The notes under the pieces are model-generated. The model made no database searches and was not told the origin of the DNA. It saw nothing but the letters and a program-made list of their open reading frames with translations. A DNA stretch of 6,620 bases from positions 1 to 6,620 of the IMG/VR virus record IMGVR_UViG_3300005859_000085. One strand, written 5' to 3'. The translations under genes and the position numbers were made by a program. This document shows, piece after piece, positions 1 through 6,271 of this stretch. How positions within the stretch are numbered: the stretch's first letter is position 1; each line of letters begins with the position of its first letter.

Positions 1-253
1 ACGAAGCTAAACGATGTCTTACAAGTTGATGAGACGTTACTCTTGAAATTCCTTCAATTGAAAAAGTGTATATACTGTGTTCTAGTACAGACCAATACCC
101 ATGAATTATAGCATCTCTTATCCACAATTCTATTTCATCATCTGTCATTTTCTCTTTATGATATTCCCATCCTTTTCTTGACCTAGACATTTTAGAGGCA
201 ATTGCAATAATTCTTTCTCCGTCTGGAGTATAAGAAACTAAAGTTACTTTCAT
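1..253 (-). CDS. thyX: Flavin-dependent thymidylate synthase ThyX (5' part; runs off the window start)
   Basis: Manual translation from ATG at 253: [84 protein letters not shown]. It has the ThyX signatures [29 protein letters not shown] Shine-Dalgarno lies at 259-263. Not in the ORF track because it is truncated. Confidence 0.95.
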
Positions 254-265
254 TTTTTTCACCTT

Positions 266-469: not shown

Positions 470-748
470 TTAAATTAACACCTCGACTTTCTTTACAATT
501 ACTATTTTTCCTATAGTTATGGAGACTGTATAATCTTCTTCATTTTTTAGTTTATTTATTCTAATTTCAAAATAAAAGTTTCTATTTCTAATTTCTAGAT
601 ATCCTTTAATAATGTTATCTTTTTTTGTATAAAATAATATTTCAAATTTTTCTAAAAAATTTACAGTTTTGTATAATAAAATTTCTATATCTTCTTTCTT
701 CATTTCTTCGATTTTATTTATTATTTCTTGAAATGGGTTTTCAGTCAT
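470..748 (-). CDS. Hypothetical viral protein (92 aa), first gene of a probable ORF92-RHH-thyX operon
   Basis: Intact ORF with a TATA+TGTCATAA promoter at 771-786 and GGGGA upstream. No recognisable motif. Confidence 0.75.
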   Translation of the reverse strand: MTENPFQEIINKIEEMKKEDIEILLYKTVNFLEKFEILFYTKKDNIIKGYLEIRNRNFYFEIRINKLKNEEDYTVSITIGKIVIVKKVEVLI

Positions 749-770
749 ATTTCCCCATATAATTATTGTA

Positions 771-786
771 TTATGACAAATAAAAA
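771..786 (-). promoter_or_regulatory. Rudiviral TATA + GTC promoter of ORF92
   Basis: Minus strand reads TTTTTATTTGTCATAA about 30 nt upstream of the ATG at 748. TATA followed by GTC is the described SIRV promoter element. Confidence 0.75.
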
Positions 787-822
787 GGCTTTTAAATTTA
801 CATCTTGTTAGATTAACAATAC

Positions 823-844
823 ATATTCAAAATATTTTGAATAT
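823..844. repeat. Perfect 22-bp palindrome ATATTCAAAATATTTTGAATAT
   Basis: The sequence is its own reverse complement. It lies at the end of cas4 and upstream of the ORF92 promoter. Confidence 0.85.
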
Positions 845-1485
845 TACTTTTTCTCAATTGTTTGTAAATAGTCTAAAACAGAACCAGAACATTTAGCTTT
901 AAATTCGCAATTTTTACAAAGATAATTATTAGCTCCTGGGATATTTTTATAGTCTGTCAATTTCAAATATTCCTTAAATTTCTTAATCCAATCTATAGCT
1001 TTTTGTATATAATCTTCTAATACATTCTTTTCAATTTGAAATTGTTTAACTTCCCTATTTATTCTATTTAAATATATAATATAGACATTATCAATTTTAT
1101 AATTTTGTAATTTTAATAAATAGTAATATATTGCAATTTGGTATAGATGATATTCTTTAATGTTAAAGTAATTATTTGAGATTGTTTTAATTTCAAGTAA
1201 ATCATTTCCACAAATCAAATCTATTCTGCCAGAAATTTTTAGACCTTCTATTTCTCCTTTTACTTCTATTTCAGTTTGGCATCCTAACTTTTCAGTGAAA
1301 TAGTTCTCTATTCTTAAATGATGTTGTTCACCAAGCTCCAAAGTAAGTTCATTTATTCCTTTTTCAAATTCAAATTTCCTAGAGAAATATGATTTTCTGA
1401 AACATATTCCAACTTCAGATGGAAATATTGTATCTTCTGGATATTTTATCTTAAAACTTTGTTTAACTAAATCTTCATAATTCAT
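844..1485 (-). CDS. cas4: Cas4-like / RecB-family ssDNA nuclease (SIRV2 gp19/ORF207-like)
   Basis: N-terminal Cys ([10 protein letters not shown]), G..H helix, GRIDL...EIKT PD-(D/E)xK motifs, QxxxY (QIAIY) and C-terminal CxxCxxxxxC ([10 protein letters not shown]) Fe-S ligands. A GGTGA SD lies within the end of the upstream ATPase gene. Confidence 0.93.
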
Positions 1486-1487
1486 TT

Positions 1488-2795
1488 CTATTCACCTAAA
1501 TTCGAAAATCTCATAAAACTGATAATTTGATTACAAATTTCTTCATTTGTTCTCTGTCCAAATTGCAAATCTATGTCAAGAGCTTGTAATAGAATTTGTA
1601 TGTCAATAGCTTGTTCTTGTCTTCTAGATTCGAGATTATCACAAATTACATAATTGTTTATACTGTTTATCTTTTGTTGTATTAAATCTACTAATGCTTT
1701 TAAAATTGATGGATATAGAACTCTGGAATTGATAATTTTTTCATAAGTCTTTTTAATTGCTAATTGTATGATATGTATTCTATCTAAAATTGCTGAAGTA
1801 AATATTTGATAATTTACAAGATAATCTTCTACATCTGGGGTTCTAAGTCTGTTTAGAGTCATAGAGTAAGGATTTCCAGCATAAATAATTGGAATACACT
1901 TTTGTATCGTTGAAGATTTTGATTCTGTGCCAGCTCCACGAGTCCAGACACAATTTTCCAAACCAGTCGAAAGTGTGGCATTTATAGCTCCTAGTTCTTT
2001 GATACTGTATCCATCTTTCCAATTCTGTATCTCATCGAAAATTAGACCATTTGACAAAAACACTGCACCATACATATTATTCCTAGCATCATAAACTAGA
2101 TTTGCATATGTTGGAGTTTCTGTATAATAACGGAAGTTAAACACTTCTTGTAATATCATAAATGTTGTAGTTTTACCGGTTCCACGATTAGATATTTCTA
2201 TATAATTTATCTGACGTTTGGTAATTGGAGATTTAAATAATGGGAATAATCTAGGAAGATACAGAAAGATATCTTGAATTTCCATTTTTGTTGGGTCATA
2301 ACCAAAAGCCTGGAGTAAGAGGGCATAAGTTTGATGTTCCTGATTTGCTAAGTCAAAAAGTTCTTTAGCAATTTCATAATTATTCGGCGGTTCTATAGAA
2401 TAAATATCGTCAATATACCAGCCATTAGCACCTTTTCTTATCTTTACAAACATAAAACTAGTTATTAAGTTATAGAAATCGTCTGGATTATCTGCTATAT
2501 AATGCGGGTCAAAACTTGCTGTAAATCCATTCTGAAATCTAGCAATTATTTTGTCATTTTTTACTTTAAAATTTGTTATTTTAGAGATAAATTTTACTTC
2601 GTCGTAATATGGCAAAGTTGCTGAAAAATATTGTTGGTCTATCCCTCTTCTATAAGCCTTCAAAATTTCATTTTTCTTCTTTTCATCTATTTGTTTTTCT
2701 GACAAGATAATATTTAAAACACGTTCTGTATCTCTTGGATTATAAAAAAAAGAATGTTGTTTGGCTTTTTCCAGGAATTGAAAGTTACTAGACAT
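1488..2795 (-). CDS. AAA+ ATPase, Lon/BrxL/MCM-like (SIRV2 gp18/ORF436-like, reported ssDNA-annealing ATPase)
   Basis: Walker [10 protein letters not shown], Walker B LIFDEIQ, sensor-1-like YAGN, arginine-finger-like AILDR. Length (435 aa) and position between SSB and Cas4 match the rudiviral cluster. Confidence 0.9.
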
Positions 2796-2810
2796 AAAAA
2801 AAATGATACT

Positions 2811-2826
2811 TTATGACATTTTAAAA
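2811..2826 (-). promoter_or_regulatory. Internal TATA + GTC promoter for the ATPase (probably leaderless)
   Basis: Minus strand TTTAAAATGTCATAA overlaps the SSB stop codon. TGTC begins 23 nt upstream of the ATG at 2795. Confidence 0.65.
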
Positions 2827-3234
2827 CTCATCTTCAACGTTCTTTTTTTGTCCTTTCTTTTGTTGTTTTTCTTGTTTTTGTTCTGTTTCATTTTCTTCTT
2901 CTATATTTTCAAGTTCTAATTCTTCCTCTTTTACTGAATTACCATTTCTTGGACTGAATTTCACATATTCATTTAGAAGGTCTTTGTATTTGTTTAGAAA
3001 TTCCGAAATTAATCTGAAATCTTCAGCATCATTTGCTGTTATTCCTATCTGTTTTCTGTAATTAGCTTGACTATGAATAGTCATCGAATATCTCACTTTT
3101 CCATTTTCTGGTATTGCATTTAATTGTACAACTATCCTTTTTATACCTTTTATCTTTAAAACTCTGCTAACTATCTTATTCTGTTCTTTAGCTTGTTTAC
3201 CAAGTTCATCTATTATTTCTTTAAGGGAAGCCAT
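2821..3234 (-). CDS. Rudiviral single-stranded DNA-binding protein (SIRV2 gp17/ORF131-like)
   Basis: MASLKEIIDELGKQAKEQNK..SR.LKIKGIKRIVVQLNA N-terminus recognised as the ORF131 family. Charged, low-complexity C-terminal tail ending in acidic EDEF, as in SSBs. Synteny with ATPase and Cas4. Confidence 0.85.
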   Translation of the reverse strand: MASLKEIIDELGKQAKEQNKIVSRVLKIKGIKRIVVQLNAIPENGKVRYSMTIHSQANYRKQIGITANDAEDFRLISEFLNKYKDLLNEYVKFSPRNGNSVKEEELELENIEEENETEQKQEKQQKKGQKKNVEDEF

Positions 3235-3260
3235 CTATTTCCCCTAATTAGTATATTAAA

Positions 3261-3277
3261 TTATGACAAATATAAAT
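3261..3277 (-). promoter_or_regulatory. TATA + GTC promoter of the SSB-ATPase-Cas4 cluster
   Basis: Minus strand ATTTATATTTGTCATAA, followed by an AGGGGA SD-like element at 3240-3245. Confidence 0.75.
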
Positions 3278-3394
3278 ATTAACAAACTTATAAGTTAGCA
3301 TATTTTTCAATATTTTTATTATAAATACAAAAAGCAATATACATTATATTTTGAATATGGGGTTTAAGAGTTAAGAAACAAAATAAAAAAATAT

Positions 3395-3667
3395 TTAAAT
3401 TAACTTAAAGAACAAAGACCTTACAAGTCTCGATATTTTTGTATTGTATTTTTTTGCTAATTGTTCTAGTTTATTGTAATATAATTGGTCTACTGTAAAG
3501 AATACTTTCCCGTCGTAAACATCAGGTCTTTCTATTAATCTAAACTCTTCTTGTTGGTTTAATAATTTATCTATTTCTTGTTTAATTAATTCCCTTTTCT
3601 CGTAAAAAATAGATTGATATTTATGTGGAATTCGAACTTCAACATATTTGTTTCTTTGTCTTCTCAT
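3395..3667 (-). CDS. Putative DNA-binding protein with a C-terminal RHH and possibly a second N-terminal RHH-like unit
   Basis: KVFFTVDQLYYNKLEQLAKKYNTKISRLVRSLF is RHH-like, and N-terminal KYVEVRIPHKY resembles a second ribbon. AGGAG SD upstream. Confidence 0.7.
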   Translation of the reverse strand: MRRQRNKYVEVRIPHKYQSIFYEKRELIKQEIDKLLNQQEEFRLIERPDVYDGKVFFTVDQLYYNKLEQLAKKYNTKISRLVRSLFFKLI

Positions 3668-3699
3668 ATTTTTTTATTCTCCTATTCTCAATTTAAACG

Positions 3700-3721
3700 T
3701 GACATTAACATTTAAATGTCA
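3700..3721. promoter_or_regulatory. rep promoter (TTTAAA-TGTC) embedded in the inverted repeat TGACATT-N8-AATGTCA
   Basis: TTTAAATGTC at 3711-3720, with TGTC beginning 22 nt upstream of the rep ATG. Perfect palindrome ACATTTAAATGT at 3708-3719. Outer arms at 3700-3706 and 3715-3721. Confidence 0.65.
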
Positions 3722-3738
3722 GATATTCATTTTGTTAC

Positions 3739-4086
3739 ATGGATTGTAAAAAAGTTTTTAATTATCACTTTCTTTACTCTTATACTTATTTTATTACAAT
3801 TTCTACGAATTATCGATACGGAGATACAACAAAAATCTATAAGAAATTTCGACAATATGTTTATAATCATGATTCAAATTCTCATGTTTTTTCTGTGAAA
3901 GAATATACAACAAAATTCCATGGACTACATTATCATGTTCTTGTCTTTACGAATAAACGTTTAGATTATTCTAGAGTACATAAACGTATGCCAAAACATT
4001 CCGACATTCGGATAGAATTAGTTCCAAAAACAAAAAGTGATATAAAAAAAGTATTAACTTATATGCTTAAAAGTCAAGTTTTCTAG
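3739..4086 (+). CDS. rep: HUH-superfamily Rep nicking endonuclease (SIRV1 ORF119 / SIRV2 gp16-like)
   Basis: Motif I YFITIST, motif II GLHYHVLVF (HUH), motif III YMLK (catalytic Tyr). Size 115 aa. Confidence 0.92.
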   Translation: MDCKKVFNYHFLYSYTYFITISTNYRYGDTTKIYKKFRQYVYNHDSNSHVFSVKEYTTKFHGLHYHVLVFTNKRLDYSRVHKRMPKHSDIRIELVPKTKSDIKKVLTYMLKSQVF

Positions 4087-4087
4087 A

Positions 4088-4384
4088 TTATTTGGTTTGT
4101 TGATTTTGGGAATTCTGATTTTGTATAACTTTCTTTTGTGCTAGATTATTTACATCTGAAAGTGTATCCATGTTTAGGAGTGCATTTACTCCAAGAGTTG
4201 TAGTATCTTTTATACTTTCAATTGCTGTAATTGTAGATTTTGACATTTCATTTACAGCGTTTTGAAAAGTCTCATTATTTTGTTTCTGATTGTATAAATT
4301 TATTACTTCTCCAACAATATATGACGCTATTAGAACACCCATTAACGTTAAAAATCCTTCTTCTACATATGGCAGGATATGCAT
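4088..4384 (-). CDS. Virus-associated pyramid protein PVAP (SIRV2 P98 / STIV C92-like) for virion egress
   Basis: N-terminal TM segment (GFLTLMGVLIASYIVGEVINLY) followed by MSKSTITAIESIKDTT.G.NALLNMDTL.DVN.LA, which closely matches the P98 sequence as recalled. Length 98 aa. Confidence 0.92.
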   Translation of the reverse strand: MHILPYVEEGFLTLMGVLIASYIVGEVINLYNQKQNNETFQNAVNEMSKSTITAIESIKDTTTLGVNALLNMDTLSDVNNLAQKKVIQNQNSQNQQTK

Positions 4385-4442
4385 ACTAATTCTATATTAA
4401 ACAAATTGTTTTGTAATAAATTTTTCGCAAAAAATCGAAACC

Positions 4443-4458
4443 TATAAATATGTCATAA
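4443..4458 (+). promoter_or_regulatory. TATA + GTC promoter of the svtR-RHH operon
   Basis: TATAAATATGTCATAA, with a purine-rich BRE-like CGAAA upstream. Confidence 0.75.
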
Positions 4459-4482
4459 TATATTTTTAGAAAATGATGGAAA

Positions 4483-4656
4483 ATGGCGGAAAAAGTAAAA
4501 TCTGAACAAAAATCAGAGAAGGTAGTTTTTGGAATAAATATAGATAAAAATCTCAAGATAAAATTGAAGAAATATTGTGCTGAACAAGATATAACAATTA
4601 CAGAAGCTATAGAACAAGCTGTTAAAGAATATTTGGAGAAGAGAGGAATGAAATGA
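4483..4656 (+). CDS. svtR: RHH transcription regulator, SvtR (SIRV1 ORF56b)-like, 57 aa
   Basis: Manual translation MAEKVKSEQKSEKVVFGINIDKNLKIKLKKYCAEQDITITEAIEQAVKEYLEKRGMK. The VFGI..DK.LK..LK.YCA......T.AIE.A.KEYL pattern matches SvtR as recalled. Absent from the ORF track, probably because of its length. Confidence 0.88.
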   Translation: MAEKVKSEQKSEKVVFGINIDKNLKIKLKKYCAEQDITITEAIEQAVKEYLEKRGMK

Positions 4657-4829
4657 GAGTAATAACAGTAAGACTTGAAGAAGATTTACTTAATAAGTTA
4701 GATAATTATGCCATGAATTATGGACTTCATAGGTCAGAAGTTGTTAGAAATGCAATTACAGAATATTTAGAAAAACATGTAAAAGATAATGGAAATAAAG
4801 AAGTCAAAGTAGAAACAATATCACAATAA
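4653..4829 (+). CDS. RHH/CopG DNA-binding protein, 58 aa (SIRV ORF59b-like)
   Basis: MRVITVRLEEDLLNKLDNYAMNYGLHRSEVVRNAITEYLEKHVKDNGNKEVKVETISQ is a canonical RHH. ATGA overlap with the svtR stop suggests translational coupling. Absent from the ORF track. Confidence 0.88.
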   Translation: MRVITVRLEEDLLNKLDNYAMNYGLHRSEVVRNAITEYLEKHVKDNGNKEVKVETISQ

Positions 4830-4866
4830 TAAAAAAATATTTTTTAAGTTATTAACTTTTTTTCTT
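4830..4866. terminator. Probable bidirectional oligo-T terminator region between the convergent RHH and dcd genes
   Basis: A7 run (T-run on minus) and T6/T7 runs on plus in a 37-nt gap between convergent stops. Archaeal terminators are oligo-T tracts. Confidence 0.45.
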
Positions 4867-5433
4867 TTAACTTCTATACATACTTCTTACATTTTTTTCT
4901 TCCTGGTTTTCTTTTTCTATTTGGAATTTTGGTAATGTAACATTTCTCTGGTATTGATATTTCCCATGATATGGTTTTTCAACTGGAGATAATGTTTTAG
5001 CGAAAATTAAATGTAGAAATCTTTCTCCAACTTCTAATTTTACTGGGAATTCTGAGCCTACAATTTCTATTGTTAATTCACCTTCAAAACCAGCATCTAC
5101 AATAGTTGGAGGTATAGAAATTCCCAACCTAGCATATGTAGAACGTAGATTTACAAAAGCCATAATATCATTTGGAAGTTCTATATGTTCAAGTGTGGTC
5201 ATTAGTAAATGTTCATGGGGCTGGACTATAATTTCGTTAGAATTTATAATTTCATAAAAATCTTCTATATTATCACCTGGTTCAAAAACTTTGTTAGTCT
5301 TTTTTAGTCTGGCAAATTGATTGCCAATTCTTAGGTCTATTCCATTTTCTCTAATTATTTCTTCCGAATATGGTATTATCTTTATCCATTTTTTTTCTAA
5401 ATAATATTTTAAATCACGGTCACTTAAAATCAT
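4867..5433 (-). CDS. dcd: dCTP deaminase / dUTPase (trimeric dUTPase superfamily)
   Basis: [39 protein letters not shown] and PYHGKYQYQ motifs of the Sulfolobales Dcd and SIRV dUTPase family. Confidence 0.93.
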
Positions 5434-5458
5434 ATTTGTTCAAGTTTCAAAATGCCAA

Positions 5459-5475
5459 TATGACAAATATATTTT
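5459..5475 (-). promoter_or_regulatory. TATA + GTC promoter of dcd
   Basis: Minus strand AAAATATATTTGTCATA, with TGTC beginning 32 nt upstream of the ATG at 5433. Confidence 0.7.
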
Positions 5476-5485
5476 CAATTATTAC

Positions 5486-5716
5486 CTATTTCTTCATTTC
5501 TGGAATTTTATCACACATATCATCTTCGAAGAATTCTATATATTCGTCATCTATAGTTCCTAACGGGTCAAAATATTCTACTCTATAACATTTATTACCA
5601 CAACGGACATAACAACACCAGTCTATACAATACATATTATCAAAATCACATTCATCTTTAATACATGTTCTACATTCGTCTTCAATTTTTTTGTTTAAAT
5701 TATCTTGTTTTTCCAT
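5486..5716 (-). CDS. Small cysteine-rich acidic protein (76 aa; start re-called to 5716)
   Basis: MEKQDNLNKKIEDECRTCIKDECDFDNMYCIDWCCYVRCGNKCYRVEYFDPLGTIDDEYIEFFEDDMCDKIPEMKK contains 9 Cys. A promoter motif at 5735-5747 lies inside the track's longer N-terminus, which favours Met at 5716. Confidence 0.7.
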   Translation of the reverse strand: MEKQDNLNKKIEDECRTCIKDECDFDNMYCIDWCCYVRCGNKCYRVEYFDPLGTIDDEYIEFFEDDMCDKIPEMKK

Positions 5717-5734
5717 AATTGTTATTTTAAAAAA

Positions 5735-5747
5735 TATGACAAATTTA
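5735..5747 (-). promoter_or_regulatory. TATA + GTC promoter of the Cys-rich ORF
   Basis: Minus strand TAAATTTGTCATA, with TGTC beginning 25 nt upstream of the ATG at 5716. Confidence 0.65.
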
Positions 5748-5754
5748 TGTCTAT

Positions 5755-5997
5755 TCATTTTGTTTTTTTCATTTTTTTAATTTCTTCTTTTAACTCATCA
5801 ATTTCATCATAAATTTCAGCAAAAATATCAAAAATTTCCACTAACAAAAATGCAAAAATTCCAGATGCAAATATTACGGCTATTATAATTTGTATTAAAC
5901 TCTTTGTTAGAATTCCTGCCGTTAATGTTCCTAATGATAAAAATATAAAAAATAGAAAAATTAAGAAAACTATTATTTCTCTACATGTTTTATCCAT
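5755..5997 (-). CDS. Small membrane protein, two predicted TM helices plus a charged coiled-coil tail
   Basis: Hydrophobic stretches IIVFLIFLFFIFLSLGTLTAGIL and LIQIIIAVIFASGIFAFLLV, then EIYDEIDELKEEIKKMKK. It has its own promoter at 6022-6038. Confidence 0.75.
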   Translation of the reverse strand: MDKTCREIIVFLIFLFFIFLSLGTLTAGILTKSLIQIIIAVIFASGIFAFLLVEIFDIFAEIYDEIDELKEEIKKMKKTK

Positions 5998-6021
5998 ATT
6001 TTATCATTTTTATTTTTCATT

Positions 6022-6038
6022 TTATGACAAATATAAAA
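6022..6038 (-). promoter_or_regulatory. TATA + GTC promoter of the membrane protein gene
   Basis: Minus strand TTTTATATTTGTCATAA, with TGTC beginning 32 nt upstream of the ATG at 5997. Confidence 0.75.
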
Positions 6039-6052
6039 GTATTTAATTTTTT

Positions 6053-6271
6053 TTATTTAGAAGACTTTGGTTTTTCTTCTAAATGTAATTCGTAATAAGC
6101 CTCAATTAATAGCTTTCTGAATTTTTCAAAATCTTCTTTAGTTTCTAGAACTAAAAATCTTTCACCGTCCTTATCTTCCACAATTTTTATAGCTTCTTCA
6201 AATACTTCCTTTACTTCGTCAAAATTGTCAAATTCTACAAAATTATCTTCTCCTTTTTTTACGTTTTTCAT
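6053..6271 (-). CDS. Small acidic hypothetical protein (72 aa)
   Basis: Intact E/D/K-rich ORF. A variant promoter TTTTAAAATTGTTAA lies at about 6288-6302, at leaderless spacing. Confidence 0.7.
   Translation of the reverse strand: MKNVKKGEDNFVEFDNFDEVKEVFEEAIKIVEDKDGERFLVLETKEDFEKFRKLLIEAYYELHLEEKPKSSK

What the first reader, a model, noticed from the sequence alone, without database searches (positions are those of the whole stretch)
741..6007. Recurring out-of-frame start codon exactly 10 nt upstream of genes behind GTC promoters (overlapping micro-uORFs)
Seen: ORF92 has ATG GGG AAA TAT GAC TGA (758-741, minus). svtR has ATG ATG GAA AAT GGC GGA AAA AGT AAA ATC TGA (4473-4505, plus). The membrane ORF has ATG ATA AAA TAT GGA TAA (6007-5990, minus). 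dcd has TTG AAC AAA TAT GAT TTT AAG TGA (5443-5420, minus). In all four the upstream codon is at -10 from the real ATG and 20-22 nt after the TGTC, similar to the 22-25 nt spacing at which rep, the ATPase and the Cys-rich gene have their own, probably leaderless, ATG. Established: Sulfolobales translate leaderless mRNAs from a 5'-terminal AUG. Inference: ribosomes could initiate on a tiny frame that overlaps the true start, giving a translational damping or re-initiation device. Alternatively the ATG/TTG only reflects an initiator sequence preference in a 10-nt leader.
Basis: partly seen in the sequence, partly recalled or inferred. Interest (0 to 1): 0.62.

Follow-up and report, generated by a model that had tools for sequence, protein, structure and literature searches.

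The report
Start-site motif mimicking upstream start codons
The extra start codons 10 bases upstream of four genes in this archaeal rod-shaped-virus fragment are real and recurrent, but they are best read as an (A/T)TGA motif where the promoter's start site meets a very short ribosome-binding leader, not as tiny regulatory reading frames.

Summary
The window is a 6.6-kb fragment of a Yellowstone-type Sulfolobus rudivirus. All four upstream codons are at the stated coordinates: ATG at 758, 4473 and 6007, TTG at 5443. In the window alone, three ATGs at one offset is weak (P≈0.08).

Across the window plus six SIRV genomes the pattern holds. About 24 gene families have short-leader 'GTC' promoters, and NTG at −10 occurs in 8.7 family-equivalents against ≤2.7 at any other offset.

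The conserved unit is (A/T)TGA, not ATG:
- TTG (5.2) outnumbers ATG (3.6), and orthologues swap in CTG, TCG or ACG.
- SIRV2 lacks all four.
- Genuine leaderless ATGs are preceded by a pyrimidine (89%); the −10 ATGs are preceded by a purine (95%). The initiator rule therefore puts the start site on the G, which would cut the codon.
- TGA at −9 is also the register of the Shine-Dalgarno GGTGA upstream of operon-internal genes.
- The putative uORFs run 1–17 codons and are not conserved.

No TSS data could be obtained, so translation of a 5'-terminal AUG in some promoters is not excluded (~10%). Ordinary; low interest.

The parts
775..786 (-). ORF92 promoter core: T-rich TATA-like box followed by TGTC (778-775; G of GTC at 777)
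   Evidence: same layout in six SIRV orthologues
741..758 (-). ORF92 upstream ATG (758-756, at -10, G+19) and the 5-codon out-of-frame frame it opens; contains GGGGA (755-751), a Shine-Dalgarno-like block
   Evidence: Orthologues have TTG or TCG at -10 with GTGA at -8..-5. Only this one of the four has a pyrimidine before the ATG
470..748 (-). ORF92 coding sequence (92 aa, no Pfam match)
4443..4454 (+). svtR promoter core: TATA box 4443-4450, TGTC 4451-4454
4473..4505 (+). svtR upstream ATG (4473, at -10, G+21), a second ATG at 4476, and the 10-codon out-of-frame frame; motif aATGATGG
   Evidence: Yellowstone SIRVs have aATGAGG at the same place, SIRV2 has CAGAG with no start codon
4483..4656 (+). 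svtR-like ribbon-helix-helix regulator gene (57 aa, PF21432 56B_RHH)
6026..6037 (-). Membrane-ORF promoter core: TATA-like box followed by TGTC (6029-6026)
5990..6007 (-). Membrane-ORF upstream ATG (6007-6005, at -10, G+21) and its 5-codon frame; motif aATGATA
   Evidence: Orthologues have ATGAGA (SIRV4, 5, 10, 11) or ACGAAA (SIRV8)
5755..5997 (-). 80-aa membrane ORF
5462..5473 (-). dcd promoter core: TATA-like box followed by TGTC (5465-5462)
5420..5443 (-). dcd upstream TTG (5443-5441, at -10, G+21) and its 7-codon frame; motif cTTGAAC
   Evidence: SIRV5 has the same, SIRV2 has CTGAT (TGA kept, start codon lost). dcd is leaderless in SRV and SBRV1
4867..5433 (-). dCTP deaminase/dUTPase-like gene (188 aa, PF22769)
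3241..3276 (-). SSB-gene promoter (TGTC 3268-3265) with a 33-nt G-to-ATG distance. Leader has T|A at G+21/22 followed directly by GGGG (3244-3241). It is the same architecture without a start-like codon
2795..2826 (-). ATPase promoter with leaderless ATG (2795) 22 nt after the G of GTC (2817), preceded by T
3709..3741 (+). rep promoter (GTC 3718-3720) with leaderless ATG 3739, 21 nt after G, preceded by C
5714..5749 (-). Cys-rich-gene promoter (TGTC 5741-5738) with leaderless ATG 5716-5714, 24 nt after G
1492..1496 (-). Canonical Shine-Dalgarno GGTGA of the operon-internal Cas4-like gene. Its GTG is at -10 and its TGA at -9..-7, the same register as the (A/T)TGA of the four promoters

Best explanation
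The recurring codon is the first three bases of an (A/T)TGA motif. The motif marks the junction between the core promoter and a minimal leader in one class of rudivirus 'TATA-GTC' promoters. These promoters come in two classes. In the leaderless class the gene's ATG lies 21-25 nt after the G of GTC. In the short-leader class it lies 29-36 nt after (mode 30-31). In the short-leader class the T-rich proximal promoter element ends in a pyrimidine|purine step at about G+21|22-23. This is the Sulfolobales initiator, consensus (C/T)(A/G). Transcription most likely starts there, on the G of xTG. The leader that follows is 8-10 nt, purine-rich, and begins with a remnant of the Shine-Dalgarno sequence (GAGG, GAU, GGGGA). 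That remnant is spaced from the AUG exactly as GGTGA is in operon-internal genes. The base two positions before the start site is unconstrained A or T in this 26%-GC genome. So ATG or TTG appears there incidentally, and is probably cut in two by the start site. Shown here: the motif, its two anchors, its composition, its contexts and its lack of conservation as a codon. Inferred: the exact start site and the Shine-Dalgarno function.
For: (1) Two promoter classes: the distance from G of GTC to the start codon is bimodal, 20-25 and 29-36, in 197 promoter/ORF pairs.
(2) Family-weighted counts at -10: TTG 5.2, ATG 3.6, GTG 0; TGA at -9 = 7.6 of 23.7. The consensus at -10..-7 is W(A .39/T .43) T(.54) G(.49) A(.60). 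A and T are about equal, as expected from composition rather than codon selection.
(3) Orthologues interchange ATG, TTG, CTG, TCG and ACG at -10 while keeping the purine block. The Icelandic SIRV2 lacks a -10 start codon in svtR, dcd and ORF92, and no membrane-ORF orthologue was found in it.
(4) Initiator context: genuine leaderless ATGs are preceded by T (.67) or C (.22), and by A in only .01. The -10 ATGs are preceded by A (.60) or G (.35). The S. solfataricus Inr consensus is (C/T)(A/G) (PMC8448881). S. acidocaldarius TSSs have T at -1 and the TATA box near -26 (PMC10663502).
(5) Geometry: the A of leaderless ATGs lies at G+21..25 (mean 22.15). The G of the WTG lies at 21..24 (mean 22.6), while its first base lies at 19..22. 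About 40% of those first bases fall where no leaderless ATG begins. The first Y|R step in all leadered promoters averages G+22.0. Purine content jumps from 0.38 before the step to 0.81 after it.
(6) Shine-Dalgarno register: in 47 operon-internal starts, TGA peaks at -9, GTGA at -10 and TGAT at -9, while ATG or TTG at -10 is 0/47. Three Sulfolobaceae 16S genes end in GGATCACCTCA(C), so the SD is TGAGGTGATCC. A match of ≥4 nt to it is found in 66% of short leaders against 13% of shuffles.
(7) Longer leaders show the same T|A or T|G step followed at once by AGGGG, GGAGG, GGTGAG or AAGGTG.
(8) The same WTGA at -10 with a 30-nt spacing is seen in distant rudiviruses: SBRV1 SSB (TTGAT), an SBRV1 80-aa gene (ATGAT) and the ARV1 capsid gene (ATGAGG).
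Against: No transcription start site is mapped for this virus or, in any text I could read, for the orthologous promoters. The start site on the G is therefore an inference from context and geometry. TATA-to-TSS geometry alone (box ending 1-2 nt before the G of GTC, TATA centre near -26) would allow a start at G+21, which is the A of three of the four codons. The T at -9 contributes much of the Shine-Dalgarno complementarity: ≥4-nt matches fall from 66% to 27% if only -8..-3 is transcribed. That would be better served by a start site at or before -9. In the window itself the SD remnants are weak (TGAT, TGAT, TGA, GGGGA). ORF92 has tATG, a context compatible with a start on the A. svtR keeps a second ATG 1 nt inside the predicted transcript. 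The family counts rest on seven related genomes, and promoter cassettes may share descent.
Confidence: 0.65

Rival explanations
1. Leaderless micro-uORFs. Transcription starts on the A of the upstream ATG. Ribosomes initiate on this 5'-terminal AUG as on a leaderless mRNA and translate a 5-10-codon frame that overlaps the true start. This damps or couples translation of the main gene.
For: The upstream codon sits at G+19..21, overlapping the range of genuine leaderless ATGs (G+21..25). ATG at -10 is kept in all five Yellowstone-type svtR promoters examined and in four of five membrane-gene promoters. ORF92 in the window, an SBRV1 80-aa gene and the ARV1 capsid gene have a pyrimidine before the ATG. 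Leaderless short ORFs that regulate downstream genes are documented in mycobacteria (PMC4633059 and bioRxiv 10.1101/834739, listed).
Against: TTG is commoner than ATG at -10, and CTG, TCG and ACG occur in orthologues. 95% of -10 ATGs follow a purine, against 11% of true leaderless ATGs. About 40% of the WTG first bases lie upstream of any leaderless start position. The frames run 1-17 codons, several end before the main ATG, and the peptides are not conserved. In-frame analogues at -9, -12 and -18 and out-of-frame ones at -8, -11, -13 and -14 exist, so neither frame nor offset is fixed. SIRV2 lacks all of them.
Confidence: 0.1
2. A pure Shine-Dalgarno element. The start site lies at or upstream of -10, so the whole UGAG(G) or UGAU is in the leader and pairs with the 16S 3' end. 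The ATG is a by-product of an A before UGAGG. It is physically present in the mRNA but is not a designed start.
For: TGAGG is the exact complement of the last five bases of the Sulfolobaceae 16S gene. It occurs as ATGAGG in the svtR promoters of the Yellowstone SIRVs, SBRV1 RHH56 and the ARV1 capsid gene. TGA at -9 is the SD register in operon-internal genes. Complementarity is significant only if -9 is included. One family (62-aa gene of SIRV8 and 10) has ATGAT at -10 but 26 nt after GTC, away from the predicted start site.
Against: Operon-internal genes have G, never A or T, at -10 (GTGA 6/47; ATG or TTG 0/47). The loss of G there fits a position outside the transcript or inside the AT-rich promoter-proximal element. 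A pyrimidine start for the TTG variants is unlikely. The composition switch is at G+22/23.
Confidence: 0.18
3. Chance, or shared descent of promoter cassettes, with no constraint at all on these bases.
For: The window-only test for ATG is weak (P≈0.08). The genomes compared are related. The dcd leader and the leader of an unrelated 236-aa gene are nearly identical, which suggests copying of promoter-leader cassettes.
Against: The family-weighted excess at -10 was not reached in any shuffle. The spacer between GTCATA and the motif is not conserved between families, while the motif is. The motif recurs in SBRV1 and ARV1, which use GTA or other spacers.
Confidence: 0.05

Closest known systems
SIRV1/SIRV2 'GTC' promoters (Kessler et al. 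2004, J Bacteriol 186:7745; summarised in PMC5569661)
   Same: A TATA box directly followed by (T/C)GTC, repeated before most transcription units. The genes and gene order match those of SIRV-type rudiviruses.
   Different: The primary paper was not available, so I cannot say whether the (A/T)TGA at the start site or the two spacing classes were described there. SRV and SBRV1 carry GTA instead of GTC.
Sulfolobales initiator element. Inr consensus (C/T)(A/G) (PMC8448881). The older 'box B' (A/T)TG(A/C) of Reiter, Palm & Zillig 1988 is recalled from memory and was not checked.
   Same: Fixed distance from the TATA box. A pyrimidine|purine step at the end of an A/T-rich proximal element. (A/T)TGA matches the recalled box-B consensus.
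   Different: Here it is fused to a Shine-Dalgarno remnant in a leader of only about 8-10 nt. The start site itself is not mapped.
Shine-Dalgarno-led initiation in Sulfolobus (Tolstrup et al. 2000; cited in PMC2699501: first genes of operons usually lack an RBS, later genes have one)
   Same: Sub-motifs of TGAGGTGATCC at -12..-5; TGA at -9..-7 in both operon-internal and short-leader genes.
   Different: These are first cistrons with very short leaders. The complementarity is only 3-5 nt, and the first base is A or T instead of G.
Leaderless short ORFs upstream of genes in mycobacteria (PMC4633059; bioRxiv 10.1101/834739)
   Different: There the 5'-terminal AUG/GUG and its translation are shown by TSS mapping and ribosome profiling, and some of the peptides have conserved composition. 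Here the codon, frame and peptide are not conserved, and its presence in the transcript is doubtful.

Membership tests
Leaderless regulatory micro-uORF | AUG (or GUG) at the very 5' end of the transcript | not testable with these tools
   No RNA run holds the window, and the papers with mapped rudivirus start sites are not held. The indirect tests point the other way: a purine precedes 95% of -10 ATGs, against a pyrimidine before 89% of true leaderless ATGs; see also the geometry.
Leaderless regulatory micro-uORF | Start codon conserved as a start codon among orthologues | tested here: not met
   ATG, TTG, CTG, TCG and ACG interchange; SIRV2 lacks it; TTG 5.2 against ATG 3.6 family-equivalents.
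Leaderless regulatory micro-uORF | Conserved frame relation, length, peptide or stop/start overlap with the main ORF | tested here: not met
   1-17 codons. The stop lies from 4 nt before to 44 nt after the main A. Peptides are unrelated between families. Offsets -8 to -18, in and out of frame, occur.
Archaeal initiator element (Inr) | Fixed distance downstream of the TATA box | tested here: met
   The Y|R step lies at G+20..24 (mean 22.0), matching the A of leaderless ATGs (mean 22.15).
Archaeal initiator element (Inr) | Pyrimidine at -1, purine at +1 | tested here: met
   T .54 at -9 and G .49 or A .34 at -8 relative to the gene's ATG. T .63 at G+21, then purines from G+22/23. Consensus from PMC8448881.
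Archaeal initiator element (Inr) | Coincides with the mapped transcription start | not testable with these tools
   No 5'-end data were available.
Shine-Dalgarno element | Complementarity to the 3' end of host 16S rRNA | tested here: inconclusive
   The 16S genes of three Sulfolobaceae end in GGATCACCTCA(C). A match of ≥4 nt is found in 66% of short leaders against 13% of shuffles, but only 27% against 8% without the T at -9. The window's own four leaders have 3-4 nt.
Shine-Dalgarno element | Spacing to the AUG as in bona fide SD-led genes | tested here: met
   TGA peaks at -9 both in 47 operon-internal starts and in short-leader promoters.
Rudivirus TATA-GTC promoter | TATA box immediately followed by GTC upstream of a transcription unit | tested here: met
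   Eight such promoters in the window. TATTTGTCATA occurs 5 times on the minus strand, against 0-1 for the control. Conserved in orthologues.

The most novel reading that the evidence does not exclude
In the subset of promoters that carry ATG at -10 (svtR and the membrane gene of Yellowstone-type rudiviruses, ORF92 here, the ARV1 capsid gene), transcription might start on that A. The mRNA would then begin AUGAGG..., with a 5'-terminal AUG overlapping a Shine-Dalgarno core. Leaderless initiation on AUG(1) and SD-led initiation on AUG(11) would compete on one 13-nt stretch, setting or switching the output of an autoregulator and of structural genes.
Probability: 0.1. Interest if true: 0.55.

Novelty: new member of a known kind. 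Interest (0 to 1): 0.2.

Why it matters
If the uORF reading were true, it would be a first case of leaderless upstream ORFs controlling archaeal virus genes. As it stands, the value is practical. Rudivirus TATA-GTC promoters fall into a leaderless class and an 8-10-nt-leader class. The short-leader class carries an (A/T)TGA start-site/Shine-Dalgarno junction. This helps to place gene starts: for example, the Cys-rich gene here starts at 5716, and the annotated SIRV2 ORF84a start is doubtful. It also helps to predict start sites, and it warns against reading start-like triplets at archaeal initiators as coding signals.

Tried and rejected
1. Primary literature on start sites was not held: Kessler 2004 (PMC524901), Guillière 2009 (PMC2755947), Ao 2013 (PMC3811598) and Reiter 1988 (PMC334609). 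The Sta1 paper gives no start-site coordinates in its text.

2. Public reads: only one DNA hot-spring metagenome run holds the window, and no RNA run does. Laying its contigs showed a very diverse rudivirus population (1525 contigs at ≥85% likeness). None of the 40 variant rows shown touches the four sites, and 385 rows were not shown. So nothing can be concluded about polymorphism at the sites or about RNA ends.

3. SvtR operator idea. The published consensus ends in AAAATG, and the window's svtR promoter has two AAAATG copies 10 nt apart. By eye the rest of the consensus does not fit, and this could explain only one of the four promoters. Not pursued.

4. My own ORF-based gene calls matched only 40 of 54 annotated SIRV2 starts, because many annotated starts are GTG or TTG. 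I therefore anchored the statistics on promoters rather than on annotation.

5. GTC-anchored scans of SRV, SBRV1 and ARV1 gave mostly false hits.

6. The large protein searches, structure prediction and complex prediction were not used; the question does not turn on protein identity.

Full report
WHAT THE WINDOW IS. The 6620-nt window is a whole IMG/VR record classed as a linear fragment, about 20% complete. It is 76-79% identical in DNA to Sulfolobus islandicus rod-shaped viruses. Its 435-aa ATPase is 82-85% identical to those of the Yellowstone SIRVs (genus Usarudivirus) and 77% identical to those of SIRV1, 2 and 3. The genes are:
- the N-terminus of thyX, an RHH protein and ORF92;
- a Cas4-like nuclease, the BrxL-like ATPase and the PHA01746-type ssDNA-binding protein (SSB);
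- a 90-aa ORF, rep (PF21578), a P98-like ORF, svtR (PF21432) and a second RHH;
- dCTP deaminase/dUTPase, a Cys-rich ORF, an 80-aa membrane ORF, and two small ORFs.

THE OBSERVATION. Measured from the G of GTC, the gene's ATG lies at +21 (rep), +22 (ATPase) and +24 (Cys-rich gene; true start 5716). It lies at +29 (ORF92), +31 (svtR, membrane ORF, dcd) and +33 (SSB). The upstream ATG or TTG begins at +19 (ORF92) or +21 (the other three), which is where the leaderless genes have their own ATG. In the window alone, three ATGs at one shared offset among 15 starts is not significant once the offset is left free (P≈0.08). ATG/TTG/GTG at -10 occurs five times (P≈0.008). The fifth is the GTG inside the GGTGA Shine-Dalgarno of the operon-internal Cas4-like gene, which was an early hint of what the motif is.

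COMPARATIVE DATA. I fetched whole genomes of SIRV2, 4, 5, 8, 10 and 11, SRV, SBRV1 and ARV1. I then anchored on promoters rather than on annotation, because my ATG-first gene calls matched only 40 of 54 annotated SIRV2 starts. In 197 promoter/ORF pairs, the distance from G of GTC to the start codon is bimodal. There is a leaderless peak at 20-25 (mode 22) and a short-leader peak at 29-36 (mode 30-31). The 168 SIRV-type promoters group into 53 protein families. After collapsing identical sequences and weighting by family, there are 21.2 leaderless and 23.7 leadered family-equivalents.

THE RECURRENCE IS REAL, BUT IT IS (A/T)TGA. In the leadered class, NTG start-like codons at -10 amount to 8.7 family-equivalents, while every other offset has ≤2.7. 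TGA at -9 amounts to 7.6. No shuffle reached these values. The split is TTG 5.2, ATG 3.6 and GTG 0. Position -10 is A .39 / T .43, position -9 is T .54, position -8 is G .49 and position -7 is A .60. In the class with d = 29-32, the pentamers at -10 are TTGAT, ATGAG, TTGAA, ATGAT and TTGAG in 65% of families. A selected initiation codon, above all for leaderless initiation, should be overwhelmingly AUG. Here A and T are used as base composition predicts.

ORTHOLOGUES.
- ORF92: ATG in the window; TTG in SIRV8, 10 and 11; TCG in SIRV4 and 5, with GTGA at -8..-5 in four of the five (SIRV8 has TTGATG instead). SIRV2 has an ATG-TAA, or an in-frame ATGAGG.
- svtR: aATGAGG in the five Yellowstone SIRVs examined, aATGATGG in the window, CAGAG (no start codon) in SIRV2.
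- Membrane ORF: ATGAGA in four SIRVs, ACGAAA in SIRV8.
- dcd: TTGAA in the window and SIRV5, CTGAT in SIRV2. The gene is leaderless in SRV and SBRV1.
- SSB: no start-like codon, but AGGGG, AGGAG or AGGCG at the same place in all seven.

What persists is the purine/Shine-Dalgarno-like block and the T before it, not a start codon. The frames opened by the -10 codons run from 1 to 17 codons. Several stop before the main ATG, and their peptides are unrelated. Promoter-proximal start-like codons also occur in frame at -9, -12 and -18, and out of frame at -8, -11, -13 and -14.

WHERE DOES TRANSCRIPTION START? No mapped start site was obtainable, so I used the leaderless genes behind the same promoters as internal calibrators.
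- Context. Their ATGs are preceded by T (.67) or C (.22), and by A in only .01 (family-weighted n=16.2). The -10 ATGs are preceded by A (.60) or G (.35); the only pyrimidine case is ORF92 of the window. The Sulfolobales initiator consensus is (C/T)(A/G) (PMC8448881). S. acidocaldarius start sites have T at -1 and a TATA box near -26 (PMC10663502). Within aATGA or cTTGA, the only pyrimidine|purine step is T|G.
- Geometry. The A of leaderless ATGs lies at G+21..25 (mean 22.15). The G of the WTG lies at 21..24 (mean 22.6). Its first base lies at 19..22, and about 40% of those fall where no leaderless ATG begins.
- Composition. T-rich up to G+21 (T .63), then purines from G+22/23. Purine content is 0.38 before the first Y|R step and 0.81 after it.
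- Longer leaders show the same step, followed immediately by AGGGG, GGAGG, GGTGAG, AAGGAG or AAGGTG.

All this places the start site most probably on the G. That would leave the A and T of the 'start codon' outside the mRNA.

THE SHINE-DALGARNO COMPONENT. In 47 unique operon-internal starts with no promoter nearby, the enriched 4-mers are GAGG, AGGT, GTGA, GGTG, TGAT and TGAG. TGA peaks at -9, GTGA at -10 and TGAT at -9, while ATG or TTG at -10 is 0/47. Three Sulfolobaceae 16S genes were reached through host dcd homologues. They end in GGATCACCTCA(C), so the full SD is TGAGGTGATCC. Short leaders contain a contiguous match of ≥4 nt in 66% of families against 13% of shuffles. This falls to 27% against 8% if only -8..-3 is counted. 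So the TGA of the motif sits in the canonical SD register. The G that precedes it in internal genes is replaced by A or T at promoters, as expected if that position belongs to the AT-rich promoter-proximal element or lies outside the transcript. The dependence on the T at -9 is the main reason I keep a rival in which the start site lies a little further upstream.

OTHER LINEAGES. SRV and SBRV1 carry GTA instead of GTC after the TATA box. With that anchor, the SBRV1 SSB gene has TTGAT at -10 (d=30) and an SBRV1 80-aa gene has tATGAT at -10 (d=30). The SBRV1 svtR-like gene has tATGAGGGAG at -13. The ARV1 capsid gene has cATGAGG at -10 (d=30). The architecture is thus family-wide. The three cases with a pyrimidine before the ATG are where a 5'-terminal AUG is least unlikely.

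VERDICT. The sequence observation is confirmed and generalises. The proposed device, overlapping micro-uORFs translated from a 5'-terminal AUG, is not supported. The (A/T)TGA is the initiator step (T|G) fused to the 5' end of a minimal, SD-like leader, at a fixed 8-10 nt from the AUG. I put this at about 0.65. A variant in which the whole motif is transcribed as an SD gets about 0.18, functional uORFs about 0.10, and chance or shared descent about 0.05. The decisive experiment is single-nucleotide 5'-end mapping on the orthologous promoters of cultured SIRVs, or in vitro transcription of these four promoters.

LIMITS. The start site is inferred, not measured. The box-B consensus (A/T)TG(A/C) and the statement that leaderless initiation strongly prefers AUG are from my own knowledge of the literature (Reiter et al. 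1988; Benelli et al. 2003) and were not checked here. The family weighting reduces relatedness among the seven SIRV-type genomes but does not remove it. The host 16S sequences are from Sulfolobaceae genomes found by homology, not from the unknown actual host.

Noticed in passing
window 5714-5758: The mechanical ORF list starts the Cys-rich ORF at 5758, overlapping the end of the membrane ORF. A TATA-TGTC promoter (5741-5738) lies inside that extension, and a leaderless-type tATG at 5716 follows 24 nt after it. The gene most likely starts at 5716 (76 aa).
   Followed up: partly
window 3695-3725: rep (+) and the 90-aa ORF (-) are driven by back-to-back promoters. Their TGTCA/TGACA motifs form an inverted pair around one shared AT-rich TATA region (GTGACAT ... 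ATGTCAG). This is a compact bidirectional promoter, conserved in the Yellowstone SIRVs.
   Followed up: no
window 4470-4485: The svtR promoter carries two AAAATG copies exactly 10 nt apart (the second contains the true start) and a tandem ATGATG. The published SvtR operator consensus ends in AAAATG (PMC5569661). The rest of the consensus did not fit by eye.
   Followed up: partly
window 6018-6020: A further ATG lies 8 nt after the G of GTC in the membrane-ORF promoter, well upstream of any plausible start site. It illustrates how often ATG arises by chance in this 26%-GC sequence.
   Followed up: no
L006 (SIRV2) 12271-12285: The annotated start of SIRV2 ORF84a (ATGAGGAAT then ATGAGT) is probably three codons too early. 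The first ATG sits at the predicted start site and contains GAGG, and the second ATG aligns with the N-termini of all orthologues.
   Followed up: partly
L007-L011, rep genes (e.g. L007 6886): The Yellowstone SIRVs and SIRV2 start the leaderless rep gene with GTG, 21-22 nt after GTC, whereas the window has ATG at the same position. Non-AUG leaderless starts are therefore apparently tolerated in this family.
   Followed up: no
L012 (SRV) and L013 (SBRV1), promoters genome-wide: SRV and SBRV1 do not use GTC after the TATA box. They use GTA (SRV ...ATGTATTC; SBRV1 ...ATATGTAAGAT), so the virus-specific element downstream of TATA differs by genus while GT is kept.
   Followed up: partly
window 5433-5465 versus the 236-aa gene of SIRV11 (L009, CDS 28090-28800): The dcd leader (acTTGAACAAAT-ATG) is almost identical to the leader of an unrelated 236-aa gene in SIRV11 (acTTGAACAAAA-ATG). 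This suggests that promoter-leader cassettes are copied between genes.
   Followed up: no
window 650-6100 in run X1: The single hot-spring metagenome that holds the window contains more than 1500 contigs at ≥85% likeness, with hundreds of variant positions and several joints (e.g. 2868 to 4606). The sample holds a very diverse, recombining rudivirus population.
   Followed up: no
window 2-262: The window begins inside a thyX (thymidylate synthase, PF02511) gene on the minus strand, so only the N-terminal 87 residues are present. Among the genomes whose annotation I fetched, thymidylate synthase is annotated in SRV and ARV1 but not in the six SIRVs.
   Followed up: no
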